64,000 nucleotides of DNA from the NCBI RefSeq assembly GCF_041956535.1, contig NW_027192197.1:889647-953646 (forward strand), read 5' to 3'. Of this stretch, positions 2,198 to 19,349 are shown piece after piece. Made by a program: the position numbers and the translations under genes. How positions within the stretch are numbered: position 1 is the stretch's first letter; each line of letters begins with the position of its first letter. Origin of the DNA: Calcarisporiella thermophila CBS 279.70 (lineage: Eukaryota > Fungi > Calcarisporiellomycota). The notes under the pieces are model-generated. The model did no database searches and had not been told where the DNA came from. It was given only the letters and a program-made list of their open reading frames with translations.

Positions 2198-2382
2198 CTT
2201 GGCCCAGGCTACAGCCAGTGCAGCTTGATTTTCCCCCGCACAATCCACGGCGGGCCAAGGAAAAACGCACTCGGAAGTCCAGGTTGTTCCAAGCGAGTGC
2301 ACGGATCCCCCAGGTCGTGGATTCAATCTAGATGGGCCAATTCTGGGATCTCCGCCCGCTACCACGACTCTATCACCTGGGG
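2198..2382. ncRNA. Candidate structured RNA or element with three consecutive stem-loops, family unknown
   Basis: Pairings CTTGGCCC(2198-2205)/GGGCCAAG(2252-2259); GCACTCG(2267-2273)/CGAGTGC(2294-2300); CCCCAGGT(2308-2315)/ACCTGGGG(2375-2382) with inner GTCGTGG/CCACGAC. Confidence 0.3.
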
Positions 2383-2544: not shown

Positions 2545-3593
2545 ATGCTGCTCAATATCCCTTCGCTCCCAGATCATTCCAAACTTCTGCTTTGTTGTGG
2601 TATATCGATTCCCTCCCTTTTTTTTCAATTTGCTTAGAATCAATCTTAATTTCATCCCTTCATTTCCATTCCATAGAATTCGCCTCGCGTAAACACGCGC
2701 TCCAAAAGAGAAAAGATGGAGTGACACGTAATTTTCTCTTTTGTTTGTATATAGCTGTTGTAGGAATTTAATGTGCTCTGGGTTATTCCAGCGTATATAG
2801 TGCATCCTCTGGGGGTAGCCAAATTACTTGTTGAGAGTGGTGTACATGATCTAGCAACGCTGCAGGTATGAGTCCTATGCTTCTATGCATTCGCATGTCG
2901 CTAATAGGAATACGATATACCTACGTATTACGTATATAGGCAGCCGTTTTACACGATTTAATCGAAGACACGGATACTACTTTAGAAGAGGTATTGTTAA
3001 TATATTATTCAGCGTGGAACTAACCCATCTTACCATGGTTGTGTCCGGGCAGCTCAACCAATGTTTCGGAAAAGAAGTGAGTGATCTCGTGGTTGAATGT
3101 AGCGACGACAAATCACTTCCCAAACAGGTCCGCAAACGCTTGCAGATTGAACATGCCCCCCAGGTTTCATTTAAGGTGATTCCTCAACTCTTGTCAGATT
3201 ATTTCTGTGTTTAATAGGGTTGGAATGTGAATTTTGACGCACAGGCGAAAAACATCAAGCTGGCCGACAAGCTATACAATCTCCGCGACTTAACGCAATG
3301 CGTTCCTAAAGGATGGACACCTGAGCGAGTGCAGGAGTATTTTGTATGGGCTAAACAAGTGACGGATCGTACGTAGCCCCTTCTACCCTCCTCCCTTCCC
3401 CCATAAAAACCAACCTAATTCCTCTCTCCATTCTTGGCACACCCTCTATTTGTCATTGGTGTGGGTAGAGCTTAAAGGGACAAACCACTTTCTCGAAATG
3501 CAGCTGGACTCGGTCTATTCCACAGGAGAGTTTACCTTTGAGGGTAAGACCTACAAGGCCTATCCGGAGCATACTGAATCTGAGAAAGTGTGA
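2545..3593 (+). CDS. MESH1: MESH1/HDDC3-type HD-domain hydrolase ((p)ppGpp hydrolase / NADPH phosphatase family), 7 exons, catalytic motifs intact
   Basis: Spliced translation: [26 protein letters not shown]...[17 protein letters not shown]...[22 protein letters not shown]...[12 protein letters not shown]...[17 protein letters not shown]...LKGTN, colinear with animal HDDC3. Confidence 0.93.
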
Positions 3594-9455: not shown

Positions 9456-12400
9456 ATGAACGATTCCATTCGGCGACTACTTCGCACAGAAGATCAATGT
9501 TTACGAAGCTATAACATCACACTGGAGGGGGTGGGCTGTGTGCTGGCGATTATTGAAAATAAAGGGGAGAAATGGTTTGTGTGAAATGCATTCTTTAGGC
9601 TCATTGCAGTCAAATCTTAGGTCACATGCTTACAACAGTAAATTTGGTACAGTTTAATTATCGTGAAAGAGAAGGGTTCAACAGAGCCAAAAATCGAGGC
9701 TACATTTAAAGTGGACAACGAGTTTACAATTACGCGCGGTAAGTTTCCAAAGAGCTCAATATTATTGACAAAATAGTATTGAATATTGCACCAATTTCAT
9801 TCCGCTCAAAAGAGAATGGAGTGGAACATCCAACGATCGTTATAAACGGTTCCGGAAGGACAATGAAAATACAAACCAGCGAGGATGCTGTAAGAGATCT
9901 ACTGAATATACCTAAACCAGCAGGTCTAGTTTTATAATATATATGAACCCCTTAGCATACATACTCATAGCGTGTTCTCACTATAGAAAATCTGGAATCG
10001 CATCGCTGGGTAGAGTACTATGAAGCACTACGACGTCCTGAGTTAGCGAGCACTGAACATTCACAGTCGACAACTGAGGGTGCACATCACTAATTTGGAT
10101 TATGTGTTTTTTTCGGAATACTCATATTTACTCTTTTCCAAAATATAACACAGACCCAAAGGCACTCCTCGAAAAAAGTAGCGCACCCATGCCACCCATC
10201 AATCCTTTTATGAGTACTTCTCATGGTGGAGCCACTATGGAGTCTCCGCTTGGCAACATGTCATTAATGAGAGCGGTGAAGGAAGAATGGGTTTCGAATG
10301 AAATGATGCGGAGAGAGAGCGAGTTTGTCACTTATGAAAACATACGGTAGGCCTCTCCGCTCTCTGTGCTTTTGATCACGACATTTAAAGAACCTGTTTA
10401 TCCTCCTTAGTATCTTCGTCGGCACCTATAACGTCATGGGCAAGACTTCGGAGGATTGTCTTCACCCATGGTTTGCATGGGAAGAGAATGAGATGCCTGA
10501 TCTCATAGCATTGGGATTCCAGGAGGTAGACATTGGAGCCGAGGCACTGATCATTACCGACGTTAAGCGAGAAATCAATTGGCATAAGGCGGTGTGCTCT
10601 GGACTTGGGAAGCATGCAGAGCTATACGAAAAAGTAAAGATATCATTGAGCTGCAAAATATAACTGCAGAGGGAATGGTTAGACACTGAAAGATTATTCT
10701 GGATTTTACTGGTTTAGGTTGGGTCTTGTCAAATGGCGGGTTTATTGATCCTTGTATTTGCCAAGATGGAGTTCTTACCGTTTATTCATAACGTTGCTAC
10801 TGACTTTGCGGGCACTGGCATCATGGGCCTGATGGGAAACAAGGGCGGAGTCGCGGTGCGCCTGGGCTTTCGTGATTCGTATTTTACCTTTGTGAATGCC
10901 CATCTCGCCGCCTTCACCAACCAGGTCGAGCGCCGCAACCAGGACTATGCGGAGCTGTGTCGCCGTTTGGGCTTTCCTCTTCCCTCCAGATCCACCAACG
11001 ATCTTGGATACGCCCCGTGGTTGTATGCGTCCAATCGATATATGAACGCGGTGCCGGGGGATATGCGTGCCTTGTCGTTATTCGAGAGCGACCATGTCTT
11101 CTTCTTTGGAGATCTAAACTATCGGGTCACACTTCCCGAAGAGGATGTAAAAAAGCTCCTGAGCCAAGGGGAAATGGACCTGCTATTGGGGCACGATCAG
11201 CTCACGGTGGAGAAGCGTGCCGGTCGTGTTTTCGACGGATTCCACGAGGGCAAAATTCAATTCGCACCCAGCTACAAATACGTGGTCGGGACAGATGATT
11301 TGTACTCCAACGAAAAGGCGAAGCGCAGCCCTTCCTGGACGGATCGCATTTTGTGGTTCAATCGAGGCGATATAGAGCTTCTTAACTACACCAGCCATCC
11401 CTCAGTTCGAATCAGCGACCACAAGCCCGTCAGTGCACTCTTCAGTGCCTCTGTCCGCCGAGTTCTTCCAGAAGAGCGCCACAAGGCCCAAGCGGCTTTA
11501 TTGCGCGAGTTGGACCGATTCGAGAATGAGTGTATCCCAGATGCAAGTGTCGAGCCTTTAATGCTCGACTTTAGCGACGTAAGGTATCTAGTAAGTGAGT
11601 CTAGGACAATCACACTGTCCAACCGAGGACAAATCGCTGCCGCCTTTCGTTTTCTGCCTAAATCCTCTGGTGAAAAAGTATTTAAAAGCTGGTTGCGGGC
11701 AAGCCCACCCCGTGGTATCGTTTTGCCTGGTAAGAAATGGGAAAACTGCGCCTGTTGTTTCAAATACACCATGTCAAGCAACTCTCTAACCGAATTGCTC
11801 CCATTCATAGGCGAGAAACTGGAAATTACGCTGACCATTTTTGTGGACGAAATCTCGGCTACTCCTCTCAACCTCGAACCAAGCTCACTAAATGACATCC
11901 TCATTCTTCACCTTGAGCATGGGCGCGACTTCTTTATCTCCGTATCCGGAAACTGGCTGCCTACCTGCTTCGCGCAGCCGCTCGAGAGGCTGGTGCGTTT
12001 CCCTTGTCCAATCCGAGAGATAGATCCAACCAAAGAAGTCGAGGACCAACTCTTGCCGCACGACCGGCAACTCTCCCTGCCTCGCGAGCTGTACAGAATG
12101 ATCGACTTCATTGCCACACAGCCTCCACCACGATCGCCCTTATTCTTGACCTCCGGCGATCAGCGGACCATCGTATATATAAGGGAGTGCTTGGATACCG
12201 GTGCCGATTTCGACCTCGACAAGATGCGTCATGCAACTACGGCTGCCTCCTCTTCCGAAGAGAACCCACCTTCTGGGGACGATCCCAGTGTGGATGAGCT
12301 CGAGCTCCCCACCCACTCCATGGCTGAAACCCTCATCAAGTTTTTGGCCGCACTCCCGGACCCACTCATTCCATTTTCCGCCTACGCGCAGTGCGTGGAG

Positions 12401-12760
12401 GTAGGGTGGAAATCGCGGGAAAATGCCTACTTGGTTTTGGACAAGATGAGCCATGTCCATGTCAATGCTTTCTTGATTATCACCTCCTTCCTGAGAGAGA
12501 TGATGATCCGCACGGGGCGGACCAGTCAGGCCGATATCGAAAGTCTTGGTAAGTAATCGATCATGACAGAAAGCCAAGCTGGCAACCCACACTGACTTTG
12601 ACGTTTTGGCACTTATCTAGTTATGGTATTCTCGGCCGTGATGATACGTCTTCCTTCACCCGGACAAGACTTGCCTTCCGCCAACAACCTCGTGCGCTCA
12701 ACCGAATCCGCCCTCCGGAAACGCATCGCCTTCCTGACGCATTTCCTTGTTGAGGAATAA
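9456..12760 (+). CDS. OCRL/INPP5B-type inositol polyphosphate 5-phosphatase (5-phosphatase, ASH and RhoGAP-like domains)
   Basis: GNKGGVAVRL, FFGDLNYR, PSWTDRIL, SDHKPV; RELDRFENECIP; DILILHLEHGRDFFISVSGNW; RhoGAP-like tail AETLIKFLAALPDPLIPF. The 5' exon boundaries are approximate. Confidence 0.9.
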
Positions 12761-13523: not shown

Positions 13524-15062
13524 ATGTCTATTCGGGAGGAAGGCTATGTCGTTATCGAGACAGGATCCTATCAGATCCGGGCAGGCATAAACGTCCATGA
13601 CACCAATCGGGCGCCCTCTGTGGTAATTAACATGACTCTCATCTGATCAGTTTTCTCCACGCGCTGCAATTCATCCCCCTCCCTTCTCTACATTGAACAG
13701 GAAATCGGCACCCGTGTTGCCAAACTAACCGTACCAGAGGCCCTCGACACATCAGCGCAGCCTTCAGCATCAGGGGAGACCCCGGCTGCGGGCGAGACAC
13801 CTCAAGCAGAAGCAGACAAGCCAAAAGCAAAGCAGCAAGACAATCGGTATGTGGTAGGGAATGCACTGACAGAACTGCTGAGGGAGCCAACTAAGGAATA
13901 TGAGGTGATCCATCCGATAAAGAATGGCTTGGTGGAAAACTGGGAGGCATTGGAGGCGCTATGGTAAATATTTGGAACGCGGGATCCTGCTCCCCATGCT
14001 CCCCTTTTATCGCAGATTCCAACTGGCCATTATTTATCCTCTATAGGCATCACATACTTTTCAAGGAGTTTGCCCTGAAAAAATCTCGGAACGAGTCACC
14101 TGTATTGCTCGCGGTTCCGTCCACTTGGACTAAGGATGAATACGAGCGGGTAGCGCAAATCTTCTTCGAGAGTTTTAATTCTCCCGGCATCTACATCACC
14201 GAACAGCCATTGCTTGCTCTCTACGGTGCAGGTTCCGTCACCGGCTTAGTGATAGATATTGGTCATGAAACAACAGGTGAATATATATTTATTATAAAAA
14301 AAAATGCAAACTTGAGTCCCTGTATCCCTAATCCCCTTTTATTACCAACTAGACATTACGCCCGTCATTGACAGTATCGTGCAACACCATGCCACACAAC
14401 AGCTGCACTTGGGTGGAAAACATTTGGAGGAATATTTACTGAGATTACTCAGCGCCAATGAGCAAATCAAGTCCCAGCTAGAGGGAAAGCCCATTGACTT
14501 GAGCCTGGCCCGCCATATCAAGGAATCAGGGGTGTGCAGGGTCATTCCACCGAGCACAGAGGCGGAAGCGAACGCAGAGATGGAGGTGACTCTGCCCGAT
14601 GGAAATGGCAAACTTCGACTCGGGGAGGTGGGCTCGCAGATTGCAGACCCCCTCTTTCGCCCGGAGCTCCTTGGGAAGCAGTGCATCTCACTCCAGGAGG
14701 CTGCGATGGTCTCGATCCTCGCGTGTGAGCCCGAGCGCCGCCCGAACCTTTGGGACTGCGTTGTGGTTACCGGCGGAACCAGCCTTATCCCGGGCTTGCG
14801 AGAACGCGTGCAGCAAGAGATCGAGGCGCTGCTTGCGGTGTCCGAAAATCCAGGCGAGACTCAGTCGCATGAAATCAAGCCCCGCGTGATCCCGGAATAT
14901 TTCACGGCCCTTAAGGACACCAGCGCACAGCACTATGCAACCTATCTGGGAGGGGCAATTGTAGCTAAGCTGCTCTTCCCGGATGCGAAGAATTACACTA
15001 CTAAGGTGGATTACAATGAGCGTGGCCCCTCCGTCGTGCACAACATCGAGAAAAACTATTGA
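13524..15062 (+). CDS. ARP9: Actin-related protein, Arp9-like (SWI/SNF/RSC)
   Basis: Actin-fold motifs (QIFFESFNSPG, GLVIDIG, VVVTGGTSLIPG) plus Arp9-type tail IPEYF...YLGGAIVAK...DYNERGPSVV; 3 introns. Confidence 0.8.
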
Positions 15063-15276: not shown

Positions 15277-17912
15277 TCATTTTTTCTTTTCTTGCGACTC
15301 ATCTTCCTCTTCCTCCTCCTCTTCACCTGTGGTTGCTGCATAGACCGGCTTCGGCTGCGTGTGGGCATAGGCTGTAAAAACGGAGTTGGGTCAGTTTCAT
15401 GTTCCTAACAATAACGCCACAATCATCTCACCTTTGCTGATCCAAGTCGGCTCTTCCTCGGCGATCTTCGCATACTTAAGCAACGCCTCACGCGGATCTT
15501 CCTCTATAAAAGGTTCAACACGGCCAGAAGTTAGTATGCAATATCAAGGAATAGCTGAAGGGATGATGTTCAACCTCTGGTGGTATCCTTGATCAGAGCC
15601 CGCATAATATGCTGCGTCTCATTCGTGCCCAGGTTACCTCCTCGTCCATGACCAGTTAGGGAGTCTAGGAATGTAAGAAGAGAGTGGGAAAAAGGGACGA
15701 AGAAATAGAGGTGAGTACTACGTCTATTTCCATGCATGGGTGGTATGGGCTTGCTCCTACCAGGCTTCTTGCTGGCGGCCGGGGCTGCCTTCTCTCGCTT
15801 CCTCTTATGACTTCTTTGGCCCTCATCCCGGAACATTGGCAGTGCGTGTGGCGTGAAGATGGGTCGCTGTATTTCCATCTCATCCACCGCGCGTCGTTTA
15901 GGTTCCTTCACGACACACAGCTTCGCTCCGCGTACTGATATAGATGGATCGTAGAACACATGCACTGATCCATCGGCAGAACCAGTCACGATCTGATTGA
16001 TGCCCGGGTGCCAGAGCACCTTGACCACACTTGACTTCGTGATATCTATAGAGTCAGAGCAGAGTTAAAATAGAGCCCCGTAAAAAAAAGGGTGATAAGA
16101 GACACGTCGCAACTTACGCATTGTCTGAACTATCTCCATGGAATCTCTGTTCAACATGACCAACTTTCCGAAATCTTCTCCCTTTGGTGCAGCAGTGCCT
16201 ATTAAAGGGGGATGAGGGGGAGAATTGGTCGTGAGAGAGTGGCTCACAAGTTAATCCGATGGCAATCCTTGAATACCTGTGACTATAAGCCGCTCATCCG
16301 GAGAGAATACCACATTTGTCTCTGGGTTGACAGTGGGCAATTCAGTGGCCACGGATACTGGCTTTTTGAAATTACGAATGTCAAACACTTGAACATAAAA
16401 AAAGTGCCAAGGAGAAAGTTAGCAAAAAAATGGCAAAACCCAGTCTGTAGTTTTAATGGTACCTTTGACAGTGTCATCACCACCCCGTGTGACCATGGTG
16501 TAGTTGTTCTTTGAGAAGAGTATCGATGAAGTTTCCGTCCCTACCATATGCGCCTCTACTTCCTTTATATGCAAGCACAAATTTCAAGAAGCTTAGAACA
16601 GACCCGTATAAAAATCGGTAAGAGCAAGAAATAGAGAATTACATGGGATGGCCGCAAGTATGGCCCATTGACTGGCCACAGGCATATTCCACCGTCAGTA
16701 GAAGCTAGAATTAAATGATAAGTGCCATTAGTTCTGTAAATAACCACATGAAGTCGTTTAGCAATGCCTACCTCCCGCGATATATTTGCCGTCCGGACTA
16801 TATCCAACTGCAGTGACGGTGACCCGCTGCCCGACTTTCTTCTTGGACCGCACCACGATCACCTGCTTCTGTTTTTGTGTATAGTTGGCGTCCCATATCC
16901 TACAAACATGTCTAGAAGTTAAATATGCAATCCTGGTCAAGCAGAGGGTCCAAGTTTACCGAATGGTGCTGTCCATGGATGCCGTTGAAAAATTCTCTTT
17001 TGTAAATGGGTCCCACGCACCACTGGTGAGCGTCGCCACATGGCCGCTAGAAACAAAGCAGTTTGGTTAAGAGGGAGAATACAAAATATCATGTGGCGAG
17101 TAAGGGGAAAAGGCTGCGGCAAAACGCGCTTACTTGGTATTTCTCATATCGCGTATATATGGGTCACCCTTTGAAAACTCGGCGCTGGAATGGTTAGCAC
17201 ACAGGGTAAGCAAGAAAGATCAACCCTATCCTATGTACAATACAATACACTACTTACAGCTGGAACCCATTGCGATCATAGAGCTTTGCTCTTGCAGACG
17301 TGGTCACGACAAGGAATTGATCGCCCGTTATGCTATATTGGAGATCACGGACTTGATTGCCCTCGGACGGCTCGATGCTCCGAAAAGGCTTAAAGCTTCG
17401 ATCCATGCCAGCAAAATCCCAGAATTTGACCTCGTAATCATATCCTCCGGTTAATAGGCGCGAACCCGATGGGTCCAGAGAGAGGGCAGAGACTGTCTAG
17501 AAATAGCAATAATACATATATGGTGAAGGTTGGATTCAAACAGAGATACAGTAGCAGATCAAAAAGCCAGTATTACCCTAAAATGATCTTTGAGTACAAT
17601 CTCATGCGAGATCGGCAGATTGTCATATCCATCAGCTTCCCCGTCCAAATCGTCATCATCGTCATCGTCATCGCTGTCATGTGCAACAGACACTGCTTCA
17701 CGATTATTCTTTGCTCGTTTTGACGAGGAGGTGGAGTGAAGGGAGGGAGGAATCGGCGGTCCTATTTCATCGCCCTCACCCTCCACCCGTCTTCGAGTCT
17801 TTTCAAACTCTTCGACTACATTCTTTTTCTTGGACTGCTTTCCAAACGAAGTGGGAAGGAATGAGCTGAGGAGGTCGCTCGCGCTGCCTCCGCCTTTCTT
17901 TTTCTCGGCCAT
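15277..17912 (-). CDS. WDR70: WD40-repeat protein WDR70
   Basis: LPTSFGKQ, LPISHEIVLKDH, FWDFAGMD, KGDPYIRDMRNTKGH, WHPGINQIVTGSADG, IFTPHALPMFR, DPREALLKYA; many introns. Confidence 0.92.
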
Positions 17913-18080
17913 GATCGCTAGCAACAAAAAGATCTGTACGGTGTTCGAAGCACTTAAATTACTCTAATTATGTCTGCTAATTTTCTGAAACTCGTGTTTT
18001 ATTAAATTGGATATCTCGGCAAAAATGGATACATTCTAAAAGATGCTAATTGAATTGATAAGACTCCAGGGAAGAGCGCT

Positions 18081-19154
18081 CTATTTTTCTATTGTGTCGT
18101 CACCCTCTCTCCAGGTTTCCATTTTCTCTTGGCGTGCTTTGTGCATTCCCTCCTCGAAGGTAAACCCTATAGAGCTGTAGACCGCATCTAGTTGTATTTC
18201 AAGAAAGTGGTTCGTCCCCTTGAGGCCTGGCAAAAGAAAAAAAGCAGTAAGAGTAATAAGAGATAGGAGTTAAAATCCGCGAGCTAAGAAATGAGGGAAA
18301 AATGGGGGCATTGTTTTGGTGGATTCACATACGATCCGTTACTTGCTTTGCCCACGAAAAATATTCTTGGACTTGCAGAGGTGTCCAACCACTAGGCACA
18401 CGCCTAGTCAAATCGCGGAGCCTGTAGAGCTTCAGTGCTAGCCTGATATTCTTCGCCTATGGCAAACCATGGACATGTGTTGAATTGTGAGTGCTCAACC
18501 AGCCTGAGAGCATACAAAGTAATCTCACCCTGAAAGAAACGCTCGATGCCCGTTCTATCTGCAAGTGCTTGCGTACCATCTTGGGCAGGGATTTATCATC
18601 GCTACACTCTTCCACAAGATTGCGCACTTCTTTCCCAAAGGATTGCTCCAACTGTCCGCAAATTGCTTACATTAATGATATAGAACTCGCTGGAAAAACA
18701 AAAAGCGATGTTACCTCCTCTAGAGTGGTATTAGAGGCTTCGACGGTGTTGCACAACATGGCTGCCTATTAACGTGGGTTATTTGCTTGGGTTACCAGGA
18801 ATACGCGCATATGGAGTTAGACAGGGATGATTACCTGCAGCGTTGCTAGGTCATGAACGCCGCTCTCTACAAGTAACTTTGCTACTCCCAAGGAATGTAT
18901 AATACAGGCTGTCCATAATAAGCAATTAACAGGCGTTGCCCAAGTAAACAAGGAATTTACAAGCGCTTACATGACACGGCCTCTTCATTTCGTTGTGTTG
19001 CATGCTTTCGGGAGGTATATTCTGTGTACGAAAGAGTCAAACAAATAAAGAGCACATTAGCGTACAAGAGGTGCTGAACTTTGTGTAGTTGCTTACCGCA
19101 ACAGAGAAGAAGCTTGGAATGGTCTGGGAGAGATGGGACATTGAGTATCAACAT
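18081..19154 (-). CDS. MESH1/HDDC3 paralog with substituted catalytic residues (predicted pseudo-hydrolase), 7 exons, open frame
   Basis: Spliced translation [46 protein letters not shown]...AAMLCNTVEASNTTLEE...[10 protein letters not shown]...RLALKLYRLRDL...GWTPLQVQEYFSWAKQV; same six intron positions as the 2545-3593 copy. Confidence 0.88.
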
Positions 19155-19349
19155 TTGAGTAAATTCCTTCGCAATTCCAACGAATTAACGATTAAACAAG
19201 CAAGCAAACAAACAGTCTATAACAGCCAATGTCTAAATGTCTATATAAATAAAGAGAAGAGGCACCGAATATTACAAAATGGAGAGTAAAATGACAAGAG
19301 CCTTCGTGCTCAAGCTGCACCTTAAATAAGCACATGTCAAAGAGGATCG

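What the first reader, a model, noticed from the sequence alone, without database searches (positions are those of the whole stretch)
18081..19154. MESH1 enzyme/pseudoenzyme pair: intact paralog with the catalytic site rewritten
Seen: the copy at 2545-3593 (+) has canonical motifs. This inverted copy about 14.5 kb away keeps an open frame, all six intron positions and about 70% identity by hand count. Its changes concentrate on active-site motifs: QKRKD>QRNEE, PYIVHP>SCIIHS, LHDLIED>LCNTVEA (HD>CN, ED>EA), ADKLYN>ALKLYR. Several need 2-3 base changes per codon (CAC>TGC, GAC>CTG, AAT>AGG), while scaffold blocks such as [19 protein letters not shown] and [10 protein letters not shown] are unchanged. 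Established: these residues bind Mn2+ and drive catalysis in RelA/SpoT-type HD hydrolases; MESH1 hydrolyses ppGpp and NADPH; bacterial RelA carries a regulatory pseudo-hydrolase domain. Inference: a maintained non-catalytic partner (nucleotide sensor or heterodimeric inhibitor), i.e. a possibly undescribed eukaryotic small-alarmone-hydrolase regulatory module.
Basis: partly seen in the sequence, partly recalled or inferred. Interest (0 to 1): 0.85.

Follow-up and report, generated by a model that had tools for sequence, protein, structure and literature searches.

The report
Dead MESH1 paralog beside active copy
The thermophilic fungus Calcarisporiella thermophila keeps, 14.5 kb from its normal MESH1 (ppGpp/NADPH phosphohydrolase) gene, an old intact sister gene that has lost most metal- and substrate-binding residues but kept its fold and dimer surface, so it is probably a non-catalytic partner protein, not an enzyme or a decaying pseudogene.

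Summary
The window is from Calcarisporiella thermophila. Copy A (2545-3593, +) and copy B (18081-19154, -) are 7-exon genes with the same intron positions and phases, and 69% protein identity. My exon models equal the deposited proteins VTP21DRAFT_10657 and VTP21DRAFT_10666 exactly.

B is not a young pseudogene. Synonymous sites are saturated (pS 0.71), introns are randomised and pairwise dN/dS is about 0.1. Neutral decay to the same protein divergence would rarely leave the frame and splice sites intact.

Nearly all change is on B's branch (0.50 against 0.057). It hits 9 of 14 literature-defined metal or substrate contacts (R24N, K25E, Y32C, H61C, D62N, D66A, D122L, N126R, R142Q), against 9 of 65 other conserved columns.

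B's fold is kept (pLDDT 90, TM about 0.9 to human MESH1). The N-terminal three-helix dimer surface is almost unchanged between A and B. An A+B complex is predicted with score 0.90, against 0.00 for the best control.

Best reading: a maintained pseudo-hydrolase that dimerises, probably with A. The "nucleotide sensor" idea is weakened, because base, ribose and phosphate contacts are gone too. Expression is untested, since no RNA run was listed, and no B ortholog was found elsewhere.

The parts
18081..19154 (-). Copy B, whole coding region (ATG to TAG), 7 exons, 208 aa. It equals the deposited protein VTP21DRAFT_10666 (P0228). MESH1-family pseudo-hydrolase.
   Evidence: Exon model; exact match to P0228; PF13328 54.5 bits against a cut-off of 27.2; AF2 pLDDT 90.1; Foldseek match to human MESH1 5vxa/3nr1.
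19097..19154 (-). B exon 1 ([19 protein letters not shown]); helix 1 of the predicted dimer interface.
   Evidence: the block [14 protein letters not shown] is identical to A, with 7 third-position differences in 14 codons.
18971..19021 (-). B exon 2; the R24-K25-D26 substrate loop is replaced (QRNEE).
   Evidence: low model confidence here (block 31-40 pLDDT 66, against 95 in A).
18835..18908 (-). B exon 3; Y32C, H35 kept, P36S; then the 21-residue block identical to A (helices 2-3, interface).
   Evidence: inverted repeat I1, 80% DNA identity.
18715..18765 (-). B exon 4; HD>CN and ED>EA (H61C, D62N, E65 kept, D66A, T67S).
18529..18651 (-). B exon 5; D91 and K97 kept ([10 protein letters not shown]).
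18333..18456 (-). B exon 6; D122L, N126R, R142Q; Y146 kept.
   Evidence: (aligned to PDB 3nr1, E 3.9e-10).
18081..18226 (-). B exon 7; conserved LKGTNHFLE, then a diverged and longer C-terminal tail.
   Evidence: pLDDT falls to 50-70 after residue 190.
2545..3593 (+). Copy A, whole coding region, 7 exons, 200 aa. It equals VTP21DRAFT_10657 (P0123). Canonical MESH1 with all 14 ligand residues.
   Evidence: PDB 3nr1 E 8.3e-15; PF13328 75.7 bits; pLDDT 95.1.

Best explanation
Copy B encodes a MESH1-fold protein that can no longer carry out the family's Mn2+-dependent phosphohydrolysis. It has nevertheless been kept by purifying selection for a long time after a duplication private to the Calcarisporiella lineage. 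It retains the compact helical fold and the N-terminal three-helix surface through which MESH1 and bacterial small alarmone hydrolases dimerise. It therefore most likely works as a non-catalytic dimer subunit, most plausibly paired with the active paralog A. That would give a dimer with one active site instead of two, and would set the amount, stability or activity of the enzyme, as a prozyme or decoy does. Shown here: the intact gene, loss of catalytic and substrate residues, asymmetric but constrained evolution, and a retained fold. Inferred: dimerisation with A, and any regulatory effect.
For: (1) Homology and fold. Exon 6 of A and of B both align to human MESH1 3nr1. B passes PF13328. The B model has pLDDT 90.1 and TM 0.89-0.91 to 5vxa/3nr1.
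(2) Old and constrained. pS is 0.71 (saturated), pN 0.19, dN/dS about 0.10, and the introns are no more alike than shuffles. Identical protein blocks carry 38-60% third-position differences, so there has been no recent gene conversion. Under neutral decay to 31% protein difference, only 2% of simulations stay stop-free, and about 0.9% would keep the 24 splice bases and the ATG.
(3) Asymmetry. A and B are sisters (support 100/97) with terminal branches of 0.057 and 0.50. There are 26 B-derived changes against 6 A-derived.
(4) Active site gone. B lacks 3 of 4 metal ligands (H61C, D62N, D122L), D66 of the ED pair, and the contacts R24, K25, Y32, N126 and R142; A keeps all 14 (residue roles from bioRxiv 10.1101/325266, and PMC11554896). 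These columns are 100% conserved in 208 other family members.
(5) Scaffold spared. Other conserved columns differ in 9 of 65 cases against 40 of 119 variable columns, p = 0.005.
(6) Dimer. Published MESH1 and SAH crystal dimers use the three N-terminal helices (PMC9293644). The predicted A+B complex scores 0.90 with a best control of 0.00. That mark was reached by 51 of 78 solved complexes and 2 of 108 mismatched pairs. The runs agree in at least 95% of contacts, and the partner's pLDDT is at least 79. The interface is A 8-63 with B 9-60. At family-variable columns of that interface A and B differ at 2 of 21, against 38 of 98 elsewhere, p = 0.010.
Against: No expression evidence: no RNA run was listed, and a deposited gene model is not proof of a transcript. 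The complex score may be memory of the solved MESH1 homodimers, and it cannot tell A:B from B:B or A:A (caveat). The interface test has modest significance and depends on a predicted interface. Branch-specific dN/dS could not be measured, because no B ortholog exists in the data reached. B's own omega (at most about 0.18) is therefore derived from a saturated dS and a protein tree. H35, E65, D91, K97 and Y146 survive and two new cysteines sit in the pocket, so a different chemistry is not excluded.
Confidence: 0.5

Rival explanations
1. Neofunctionalised protein acting on its own, probably as a B:B homodimer. The remodelled pocket (C32, H35, C61, N62, E65, L122, R126) would bind a different ligand or a softer metal such as Zn, or carry out a different, thiol-based chemistry.
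For: Two new cysteines lie at or beside former metal-ligand positions next to the retained H35 and E65. The pocket changes are non-conservative and fixed, while the scaffold is constrained. The C-terminal tail is diverged and longer. The identical interface would allow B:B as well as A:B.
Against: No positive evidence for any new ligand. The substrate hairpin is modelled with low confidence (pLDDT 66). L122 removes a ligand without replacing it. No family of B-type proteins exists that would point to an established new function.
Confidence: 0.25
2. Non-hydrolysing sensor of the same nucleotides (ppGpp or NADPH).
For: D91, K97 and Y146, which touch the diphosphate and ribose in human MESH1, are kept. 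N126R adds a positive charge in the pocket.
Against: R24 (base stacking), K25 (ribose, diphosphate, base N7), Y32 and N126 (2'-phosphate), R142 and the metal that bridges the phosphate are all lost. K25E and R24N reverse or remove charge.
Confidence: 0.1
3. Unexpressed relic: a pseudogene that happens still to be open.
For: No RNA data; single species; B's branch is 9 times longer than A's.
Against: Saturated synonymous sites with pN of only 0.19. All 12 splice sites, the start codon and the frame are intact. Neutral simulation gives about 2% x 0.9% for that outcome, before counting indels. Changes avoid conserved scaffold and interface columns. A recent silencing after long function cannot be excluded.
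Confidence: 0.05
4. Still an active ppGpp/NADPH hydrolase despite the substitutions.
For: H35 and E65 are retained.
Against: Single substitutions E65A or D66K already cripple human MESH1. B lacks three of the four Mn ligands and D66.
Confidence: 0.02

Closest known systems
MESH1 / HDDC3 (human 3NR1, 5VXA; Drosophila 3NQW), the eukaryotic small alarmone hydrolase
   Same: Same fold and family. B has 45-48% identity and TM 0.89-0.91 to the human structures and passes PF13328. It has the same length class, and the predicted dimer uses the same N-terminal helices. Copy A is an ordinary member with all ligand residues.
   Different: B lacks H61, D62, D122, D66, R24, K25, Y32, N126 and R142. These columns are 98-100% conserved in the 208 other members compared, apart from K25 at 92%.
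Inactive hydrolase (pseudo-HD) domain of bacterial RelA
   Same: A RelA/SpoT-family HD hydrolase domain that arose by duplication (RelA/SpoT), lost hydrolysis, diverged faster than its active sister and was retained (PMC3153485).
   Different: In RelA it is a domain inside a long multi-domain synthetase and acts in cis. B is a free-standing single-domain protein in a eukaryote with no synthetase partner, and would act in trans.
Bacterial small alarmone hydrolase dimers (RelH of C. glutamicum and L. levettii, PaSAH)
   Same: Dimerisation through a hydrophobic patch of the first three helices, and dimer disruption destabilises the protein (PMC9293644). This is the surface conserved between A and B.
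   Different: Those are homodimers of two active subunits. No mixed active/dead dimer has been described in the papers I searched.
Prozymes: dead paralogs that pair with and control the active enzyme (e.g. trypanosomatid AdoMetDC prozyme). From my own knowledge, not checked here.
   Same: Lineage-specific duplication of a dimeric enzyme, loss of catalytic residues in one copy, and retention of the dimer interface.
   Different: A different enzyme family. Activation or inhibition by B is untested.

Membership tests
MESH1 / small alarmone hydrolase (RSH hydrolase, Pfam PF13328 HD_4) | Sequence profile match above the curated cut-off | tested here: met
   B 54.5 bits and A 75.7 bits, against a cut-off of 27.2.
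MESH1 / small alarmone hydrolase (RSH hydrolase, Pfam PF13328 HD_4) | Compact all-helical HD fold like the solved MESH1 structures | tested here: met
   B model pLDDT 90.1; Foldseek 5vxa_A E 4.4e-12, TMt 0.91; 3nr1_A rmsd 1.8 over 170 columns.
MESH1 / small alarmone hydrolase (RSH hydrolase, Pfam PF13328 HD_4) | Mn2+ ligands H35, H61, D62, D122 (the signature HD motif plus two more) | tested here: not met
   B has H, C, N, L; A has H, H, D, D.
MESH1 / small alarmone hydrolase (RSH hydrolase, Pfam PF13328 HD_4) | Invariant ED diad (E65, D66) | tested here: not met
   B has EA; A has ED.
MESH1 / small alarmone hydrolase (RSH hydrolase, Pfam PF13328 HD_4) | Substrate contacts R24, K25, Y32, N126, R142, Y146, K97, D91 | tested here: not met
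   B keeps only Y146, K97 and D91; A keeps all.
MESH1 / small alarmone hydrolase (RSH hydrolase, Pfam PF13328 HD_4) | Hydrolysis of ppGpp / NADPH | not testable with these tools
   Needs recombinant protein.
Pseudoenzyme paralog retained as a partner of its enzyme | Intact gene under purifying selection long after duplication | tested here: met
   pS 0.71, pN 0.19, dN/dS about 0.1; introns random; intact frame and 12 GT-AG sites; neutral simulation.
Pseudoenzyme paralog retained as a partner of its enzyme | Catalytic residues lost while the scaffold is conserved | tested here: met
   9 of 14 ligand columns against 9 of 65 other conserved columns, p = 2.5e-4.
Pseudoenzyme paralog retained as a partner of its enzyme | Physical association with the active paralog | tested here: inconclusive
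   Predicted complex 0.90 against a best control of 0.00; the mark was reached by 51 of 78 solved complexes and 2 of 108 mismatched pairs; at least 95% contact agreement; partner pLDDT at least 79. It may reflect solved homodimers. The interface is preferentially conserved, p = 0.010.
Pseudoenzyme paralog retained as a partner of its enzyme | Expressed as RNA and protein | not testable with these tools
   No RNA run was listed, so read laying could not be used. The protein is held only from the genome record.

The most novel reading that the evidence does not exclude
B is an obligate regulatory subunit: the physiological MESH1 of this fungus is an A:B heterodimer with a single active site. B's rebuilt pocket has two new cysteines (Y32C, H61C) next to the retained H35 and E65. 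This pocket would be a thiol or soft-metal site that couples the NADPH-phosphatase activity of A to redox or metal status. That would be the first trans-acting pseudo-hydrolase regulator of a eukaryotic RelA/SpoT-family enzyme.
Probability: 0.1. Interest if true: 0.7.

Novelty: new variant of a known kind. Interest (0 to 1): 0.5.

Why it matters
MESH1 is the only RelA/SpoT-family enzyme widespread in animals and early-diverging fungi. Its physiological substrate (ppGpp, NADPH or others) and its regulation are still debated. No regulator of it, and no free-standing dead paralog, turned up in the papers I could search.

This natural enzyme and pseudoenzyme pair differs almost only in the pocket and keeps the dimer surface. 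It is a ready-made system to ask two questions. Does MESH1 dimerisation matter? Can a pseudo-hydrolase control an alarmone/NADPH hydrolase in trans, as RelA's pseudo-HD domain does in cis?

The reach is limited. It is seen in one species, is unsupported by expression data, and pseudoenzyme paralogs as a class are well known.

Tried and rejected
- **Exon-by-exon Pfam scans.** They gave only sub-threshold hits, because the exons are too short.
- **The spliced models.** They were never typed or joined for any search tool. I searched exon by exon by reference. After that I used the database proteins P0123 and P0228, which proved identical to the models.
- **Representative-library search with B exon 6.** It returned only canonical or fragmentary relatives.
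- **RNA runs.** None was listed, so read laying was not run and splicing and expression remain untested.
- **B orthologs.** I looked with a profile containing B's exons, then with A, then with B, and in JGI metagenome contigs. No B-type sequence appeared. The two metagenome loci are canonical, intron-less MESH1-like genes. The Atlas look-up added nothing.
- **Young pseudogene: rejected**.
- **Recent gene conversion as the cause of the identical blocks: rejected**.
- **Segmental duplication with conserved flanks.** Not seen. Only exons 3 and 7 register as inverted repeats. The flanks share one 11-mer of doubtful meaning.
- **Functional link to the genes in between.** None is evident. They include an OCRL-like inositol 5-phosphatase with a RhoGAP domain and an actin-related protein.
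- **Structured RNA.** No Rfam family in 1-24000.
- **Multi-base codon changes as a sign of positive selection.** Not accepted, because they are expected when dS is saturated.
- **Homodimer complexes.** A:A and B:B could not be compared with A:B, because only one complex job is allowed.

Full report
**What is there.** Reading both loci and translating them gives two 7-exon genes.
- Copy A lies on the plus strand, 2545-3593.
- Copy B lies on the minus strand, 19154 down to 18081.
- All twelve introns are GT-AG. Exons 2 to 6 have identical lengths (51, 74, 51, 123, 124 bases) and phases. Exon 1 differs by one codon.
- The two are inverted, with 14,487 bases between them. At DNA level only parts of exons 3 and 7 still register as inverted repeats.
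- The whole 28.2 Mb assembly holds just these two copies.

**How the spliced proteins were searched.** I did not send joined, typed exon models to any search tool. Exons were searched one by one by reference. A profile of five full-length relatives plus the separate exon rows (A1) then retrieved a deposited protein, and a search with it retrieved a second. A local comparison showed that P0123 (VTP21DRAFT_10657, 200 aa) and P0228 (VTP21DRAFT_10666, 208 aa) of Calcarisporiella thermophila are letter for letter my models of A and B. All later full-length work used those ids. The genome is that of strain CBS 279.70, published in PMC11393059.

**Family.**
- Exon 6 of A and of B both align to human MESH1 (3nr1, 5vxa) and Drosophila Mesh1 (3nqw). 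The E-values against 3nr1 are 8.3e-15 for A and 3.9e-10 for B.
- Both proteins pass Pfam PF13328: A 75.7 bits and B 54.5 bits, against a cut-off of 27.2.
- AlphaFold2 models are confident: A has pLDDT 95.1 and B 90.1.
- B's model superposes on human MESH1 with TM 0.89-0.91.
- The only weak stretch inside B's fold is residues 31-40 (pLDDT 66, against 95 in A). This is the hairpin that carries the R24-K25-D26 substrate loop in true MESH1.

**The active site.** Residue roles come from two papers.
- The human MESH1-NADPH structure (bioRxiv 10.1101/325266) gives the metal ligands H35, H61, D62 and D122. Y32, D66 and N126 contact the 2'-phosphate and E65 is catalytic. K25 and Y146 contact the ribose, K25 and K97 the diphosphate. 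R24 stacks on the base and R142 lies near the nicotinamide riboside.
- The binuclear model (PMC11554896) has the ED pair and D91 holding a second metal.

In a 210-sequence family alignment, A keeps all 14 of these residues. B has R24N, K25E, Y32C, H61C, D62N, D66A, D122L, N126R and R142Q, and keeps H35, E65, D91, K97 and Y146. The changed columns are 98-100% conserved in the other 208 sequences, apart from K25 at 92%. Because E65A or D66K alone cripple the human enzyme, B cannot plausibly perform the family reaction. The base, ribose and phosphate contacts are also gone, so binding the same nucleotides in the same pose is unlikely.

**Not a decaying pseudogene.**
- A and B are 69% identical in protein, yet synonymous sites are saturated: pS 0.71, dS above 2, pN 0.19, dN/dS about 0.10. 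None of the six intron pairs exceeds the best of 50 shuffles in matched bases; three only equal it.
- The blocks of identical protein sequence carry 38-60% third-position differences. They are therefore held by selection on the protein, not by gene conversion.
- In an ML tree A and B are sisters (100/97), so the duplication is private to this lineage. Change is very lopsided, with terminal branches of 0.057 for A and 0.50 for B. Polarised by the family majority, 26 changes are B-derived and 6 are A-derived.
- Giving B 80-90% of dN and half of a dS of at least 2.2 puts B's own omega at about 0.18 or less. This is an estimate, not a branch test.
- Simulated neutral decay of A's coding sequence to the observed 31% protein difference left the frame stop-free in 2% of runs. 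At that rate the 24 splice bases plus the ATG would survive about 0.9% of the time, before counting indels.
- B's changes also avoid the scaffold. Conserved non-ligand columns differ in 9 of 65 cases, variable columns in 40 of 119 (p = 0.005) and ligand columns in 9 of 14 (p = 2.5e-4 against the other conserved columns).

**How it may work.** PMC9293644 reports that small alarmone hydrolases, including both solved Mesh1 proteins, form crystal dimers of 1200-1350 square angstroms through a hydrophobic patch of the first three helices. It also reports that breaking the bacterial dimers destabilises the proteins.

- The score was 0.90, against 0.00 for the best of 3 controls.
- That mark was reached by 51 of 78 solved complexes and 2 of 108 mismatched pairs.
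- The three runs agree in at least 95% of contacts, and the partner's pLDDT is at least 79.
- The interface is exactly those three helices: A residues 8-63 and B residues 9-60.
- The tool warns that a pass for a family with solved dimers may be memory, and that it cannot say which family member binds.

An independent sequence test helps somewhat. At family-variable columns of that interface, A and B differ at 2 of 21 positions, against 38 of 98 elsewhere (p = 0.010), or 26 of 74 within the folded core (p = 0.029). So B, while changing nine times faster than A overall, has held the dimer surface nearly fixed and identical to A's.

Paralogs of a homodimer heterodimerise by default unless the interface diverges (general knowledge, not tested here). 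Here it has not diverged. My best reading is therefore a non-catalytic dimer subunit, most plausibly pairing with A. The interface helix 2 also carries Y32 and H35, so a partner could influence A's site. That step is inference.

**Limits.**
- No RNA run was listed for this stretch, so read laying was not used and expression and splicing are unverified. The deposited gene model is not proof of a transcript.
- No B-type sequence was found in any other organism, by profile, by A, by B, or in metagenome contigs.
- Branch-specific selection therefore could not be measured, and the phenomenon is so far confined to one species.
- A:A and B:B complexes could not be compared with A:B.

**Surroundings.**
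- The genes between the copies are unrelated to them. They include an OCRL-like inositol 5-phosphatase with a RhoGAP domain, and an actin-family protein.
- No Rfam family lies in 1-24000.
- The flanks of A and B are not alignable. One shared upstream 11-mer is of doubtful significance.

**Comparison and novelty.**
- The nearest named thing is MESH1 itself. B fails the defining catalytic features, so I file it as a MESH1-fold pseudo-hydrolase, not as a MESH1 enzyme.
- Functionally the nearest precedents are RelA's inactive HD domain, which acts in cis within a bacterial multi-domain protein, and prozyme-type dead paralogs (my own knowledge).
- I found no paper describing a free-standing dead MESH1/SAH paralog.
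- MESH1 in early-diverging fungi is itself ordinary in current databases. Glomeromycota, Blastocladiomycota, chytrids, Zoopagomycota and Endogone all have annotated copies, although the 2011 survey saw it only in Cryptococcus.

**Verdict.** This is a real, well-supported pseudoenzyme paralog and a new variant of a known kind, of moderate interest. An earlier scan note on copy A (s1-606380) agrees with what I found for A.

Noticed in passing
window 2545-3593 (copy A): The active copy is not fully canonical. N34, which is 98% conserved (YINHP), is V in A and I in B, so it was lost before the duplication. A alone has T63L and V64I (LHDLIED), where B keeps the family's T and V.
   Followed up: partly
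ML tree: The Calcarisporiella pair sits on a long stem (0.54). It groups weakly (82/85) with an amoebozoan and the animals rather than with other Mucoromycota (Endogone) or Glomeromycota. This is probably long-branch noise, but the placement is unresolved.
   Followed up: no
window 2218-2228 and 19320-19330: A single shared 11-mer, GTGCAGCTTGA, lies upstream of both copies (327 bases before A's ATG, 166 before B's). Shuffles give a mean of 0.06 shared 11-mers and a maximum of 4. It could be chance or a common promoter element.
   Followed up: partly
window 10733-12556 (+): A long open exon encodes an OCRL-like inositol polyphosphate 5-phosphatase with an ASH domain and a RhoGAP domain (Exo_endo_phos2 2.5e-59, OCRL-like_ASH 7.2e-30, RhoGAP 2.7e-8).
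   Followed up: no
window 13961-15062 (+): Two adjacent open frames both match Pfam Actin (1.8e-14 and 1.7e-25). This is probably one intron-split actin-related protein gene.
   Followed up: no
window 17559-17927 (-): Another gene starts only about 160 bases downstream of B's stop, on the same strand (ATG at 17917, Lys/Gly-rich N-terminus). It has no Pfam match, so B's 3' UTR must be short.
   Followed up: no
P0120/P0142 (Rhizophagus clarus), P0157/P0264 (Cetraspora pellucida): Two deposited MESH1 proteins per species in these Glomeromycota are near-identical in the aligned core (tree distance about 0). They look like alternative models or very recent copies, not dead paralogs, and all keep HD, ED and ADK.
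   Followed up: partly
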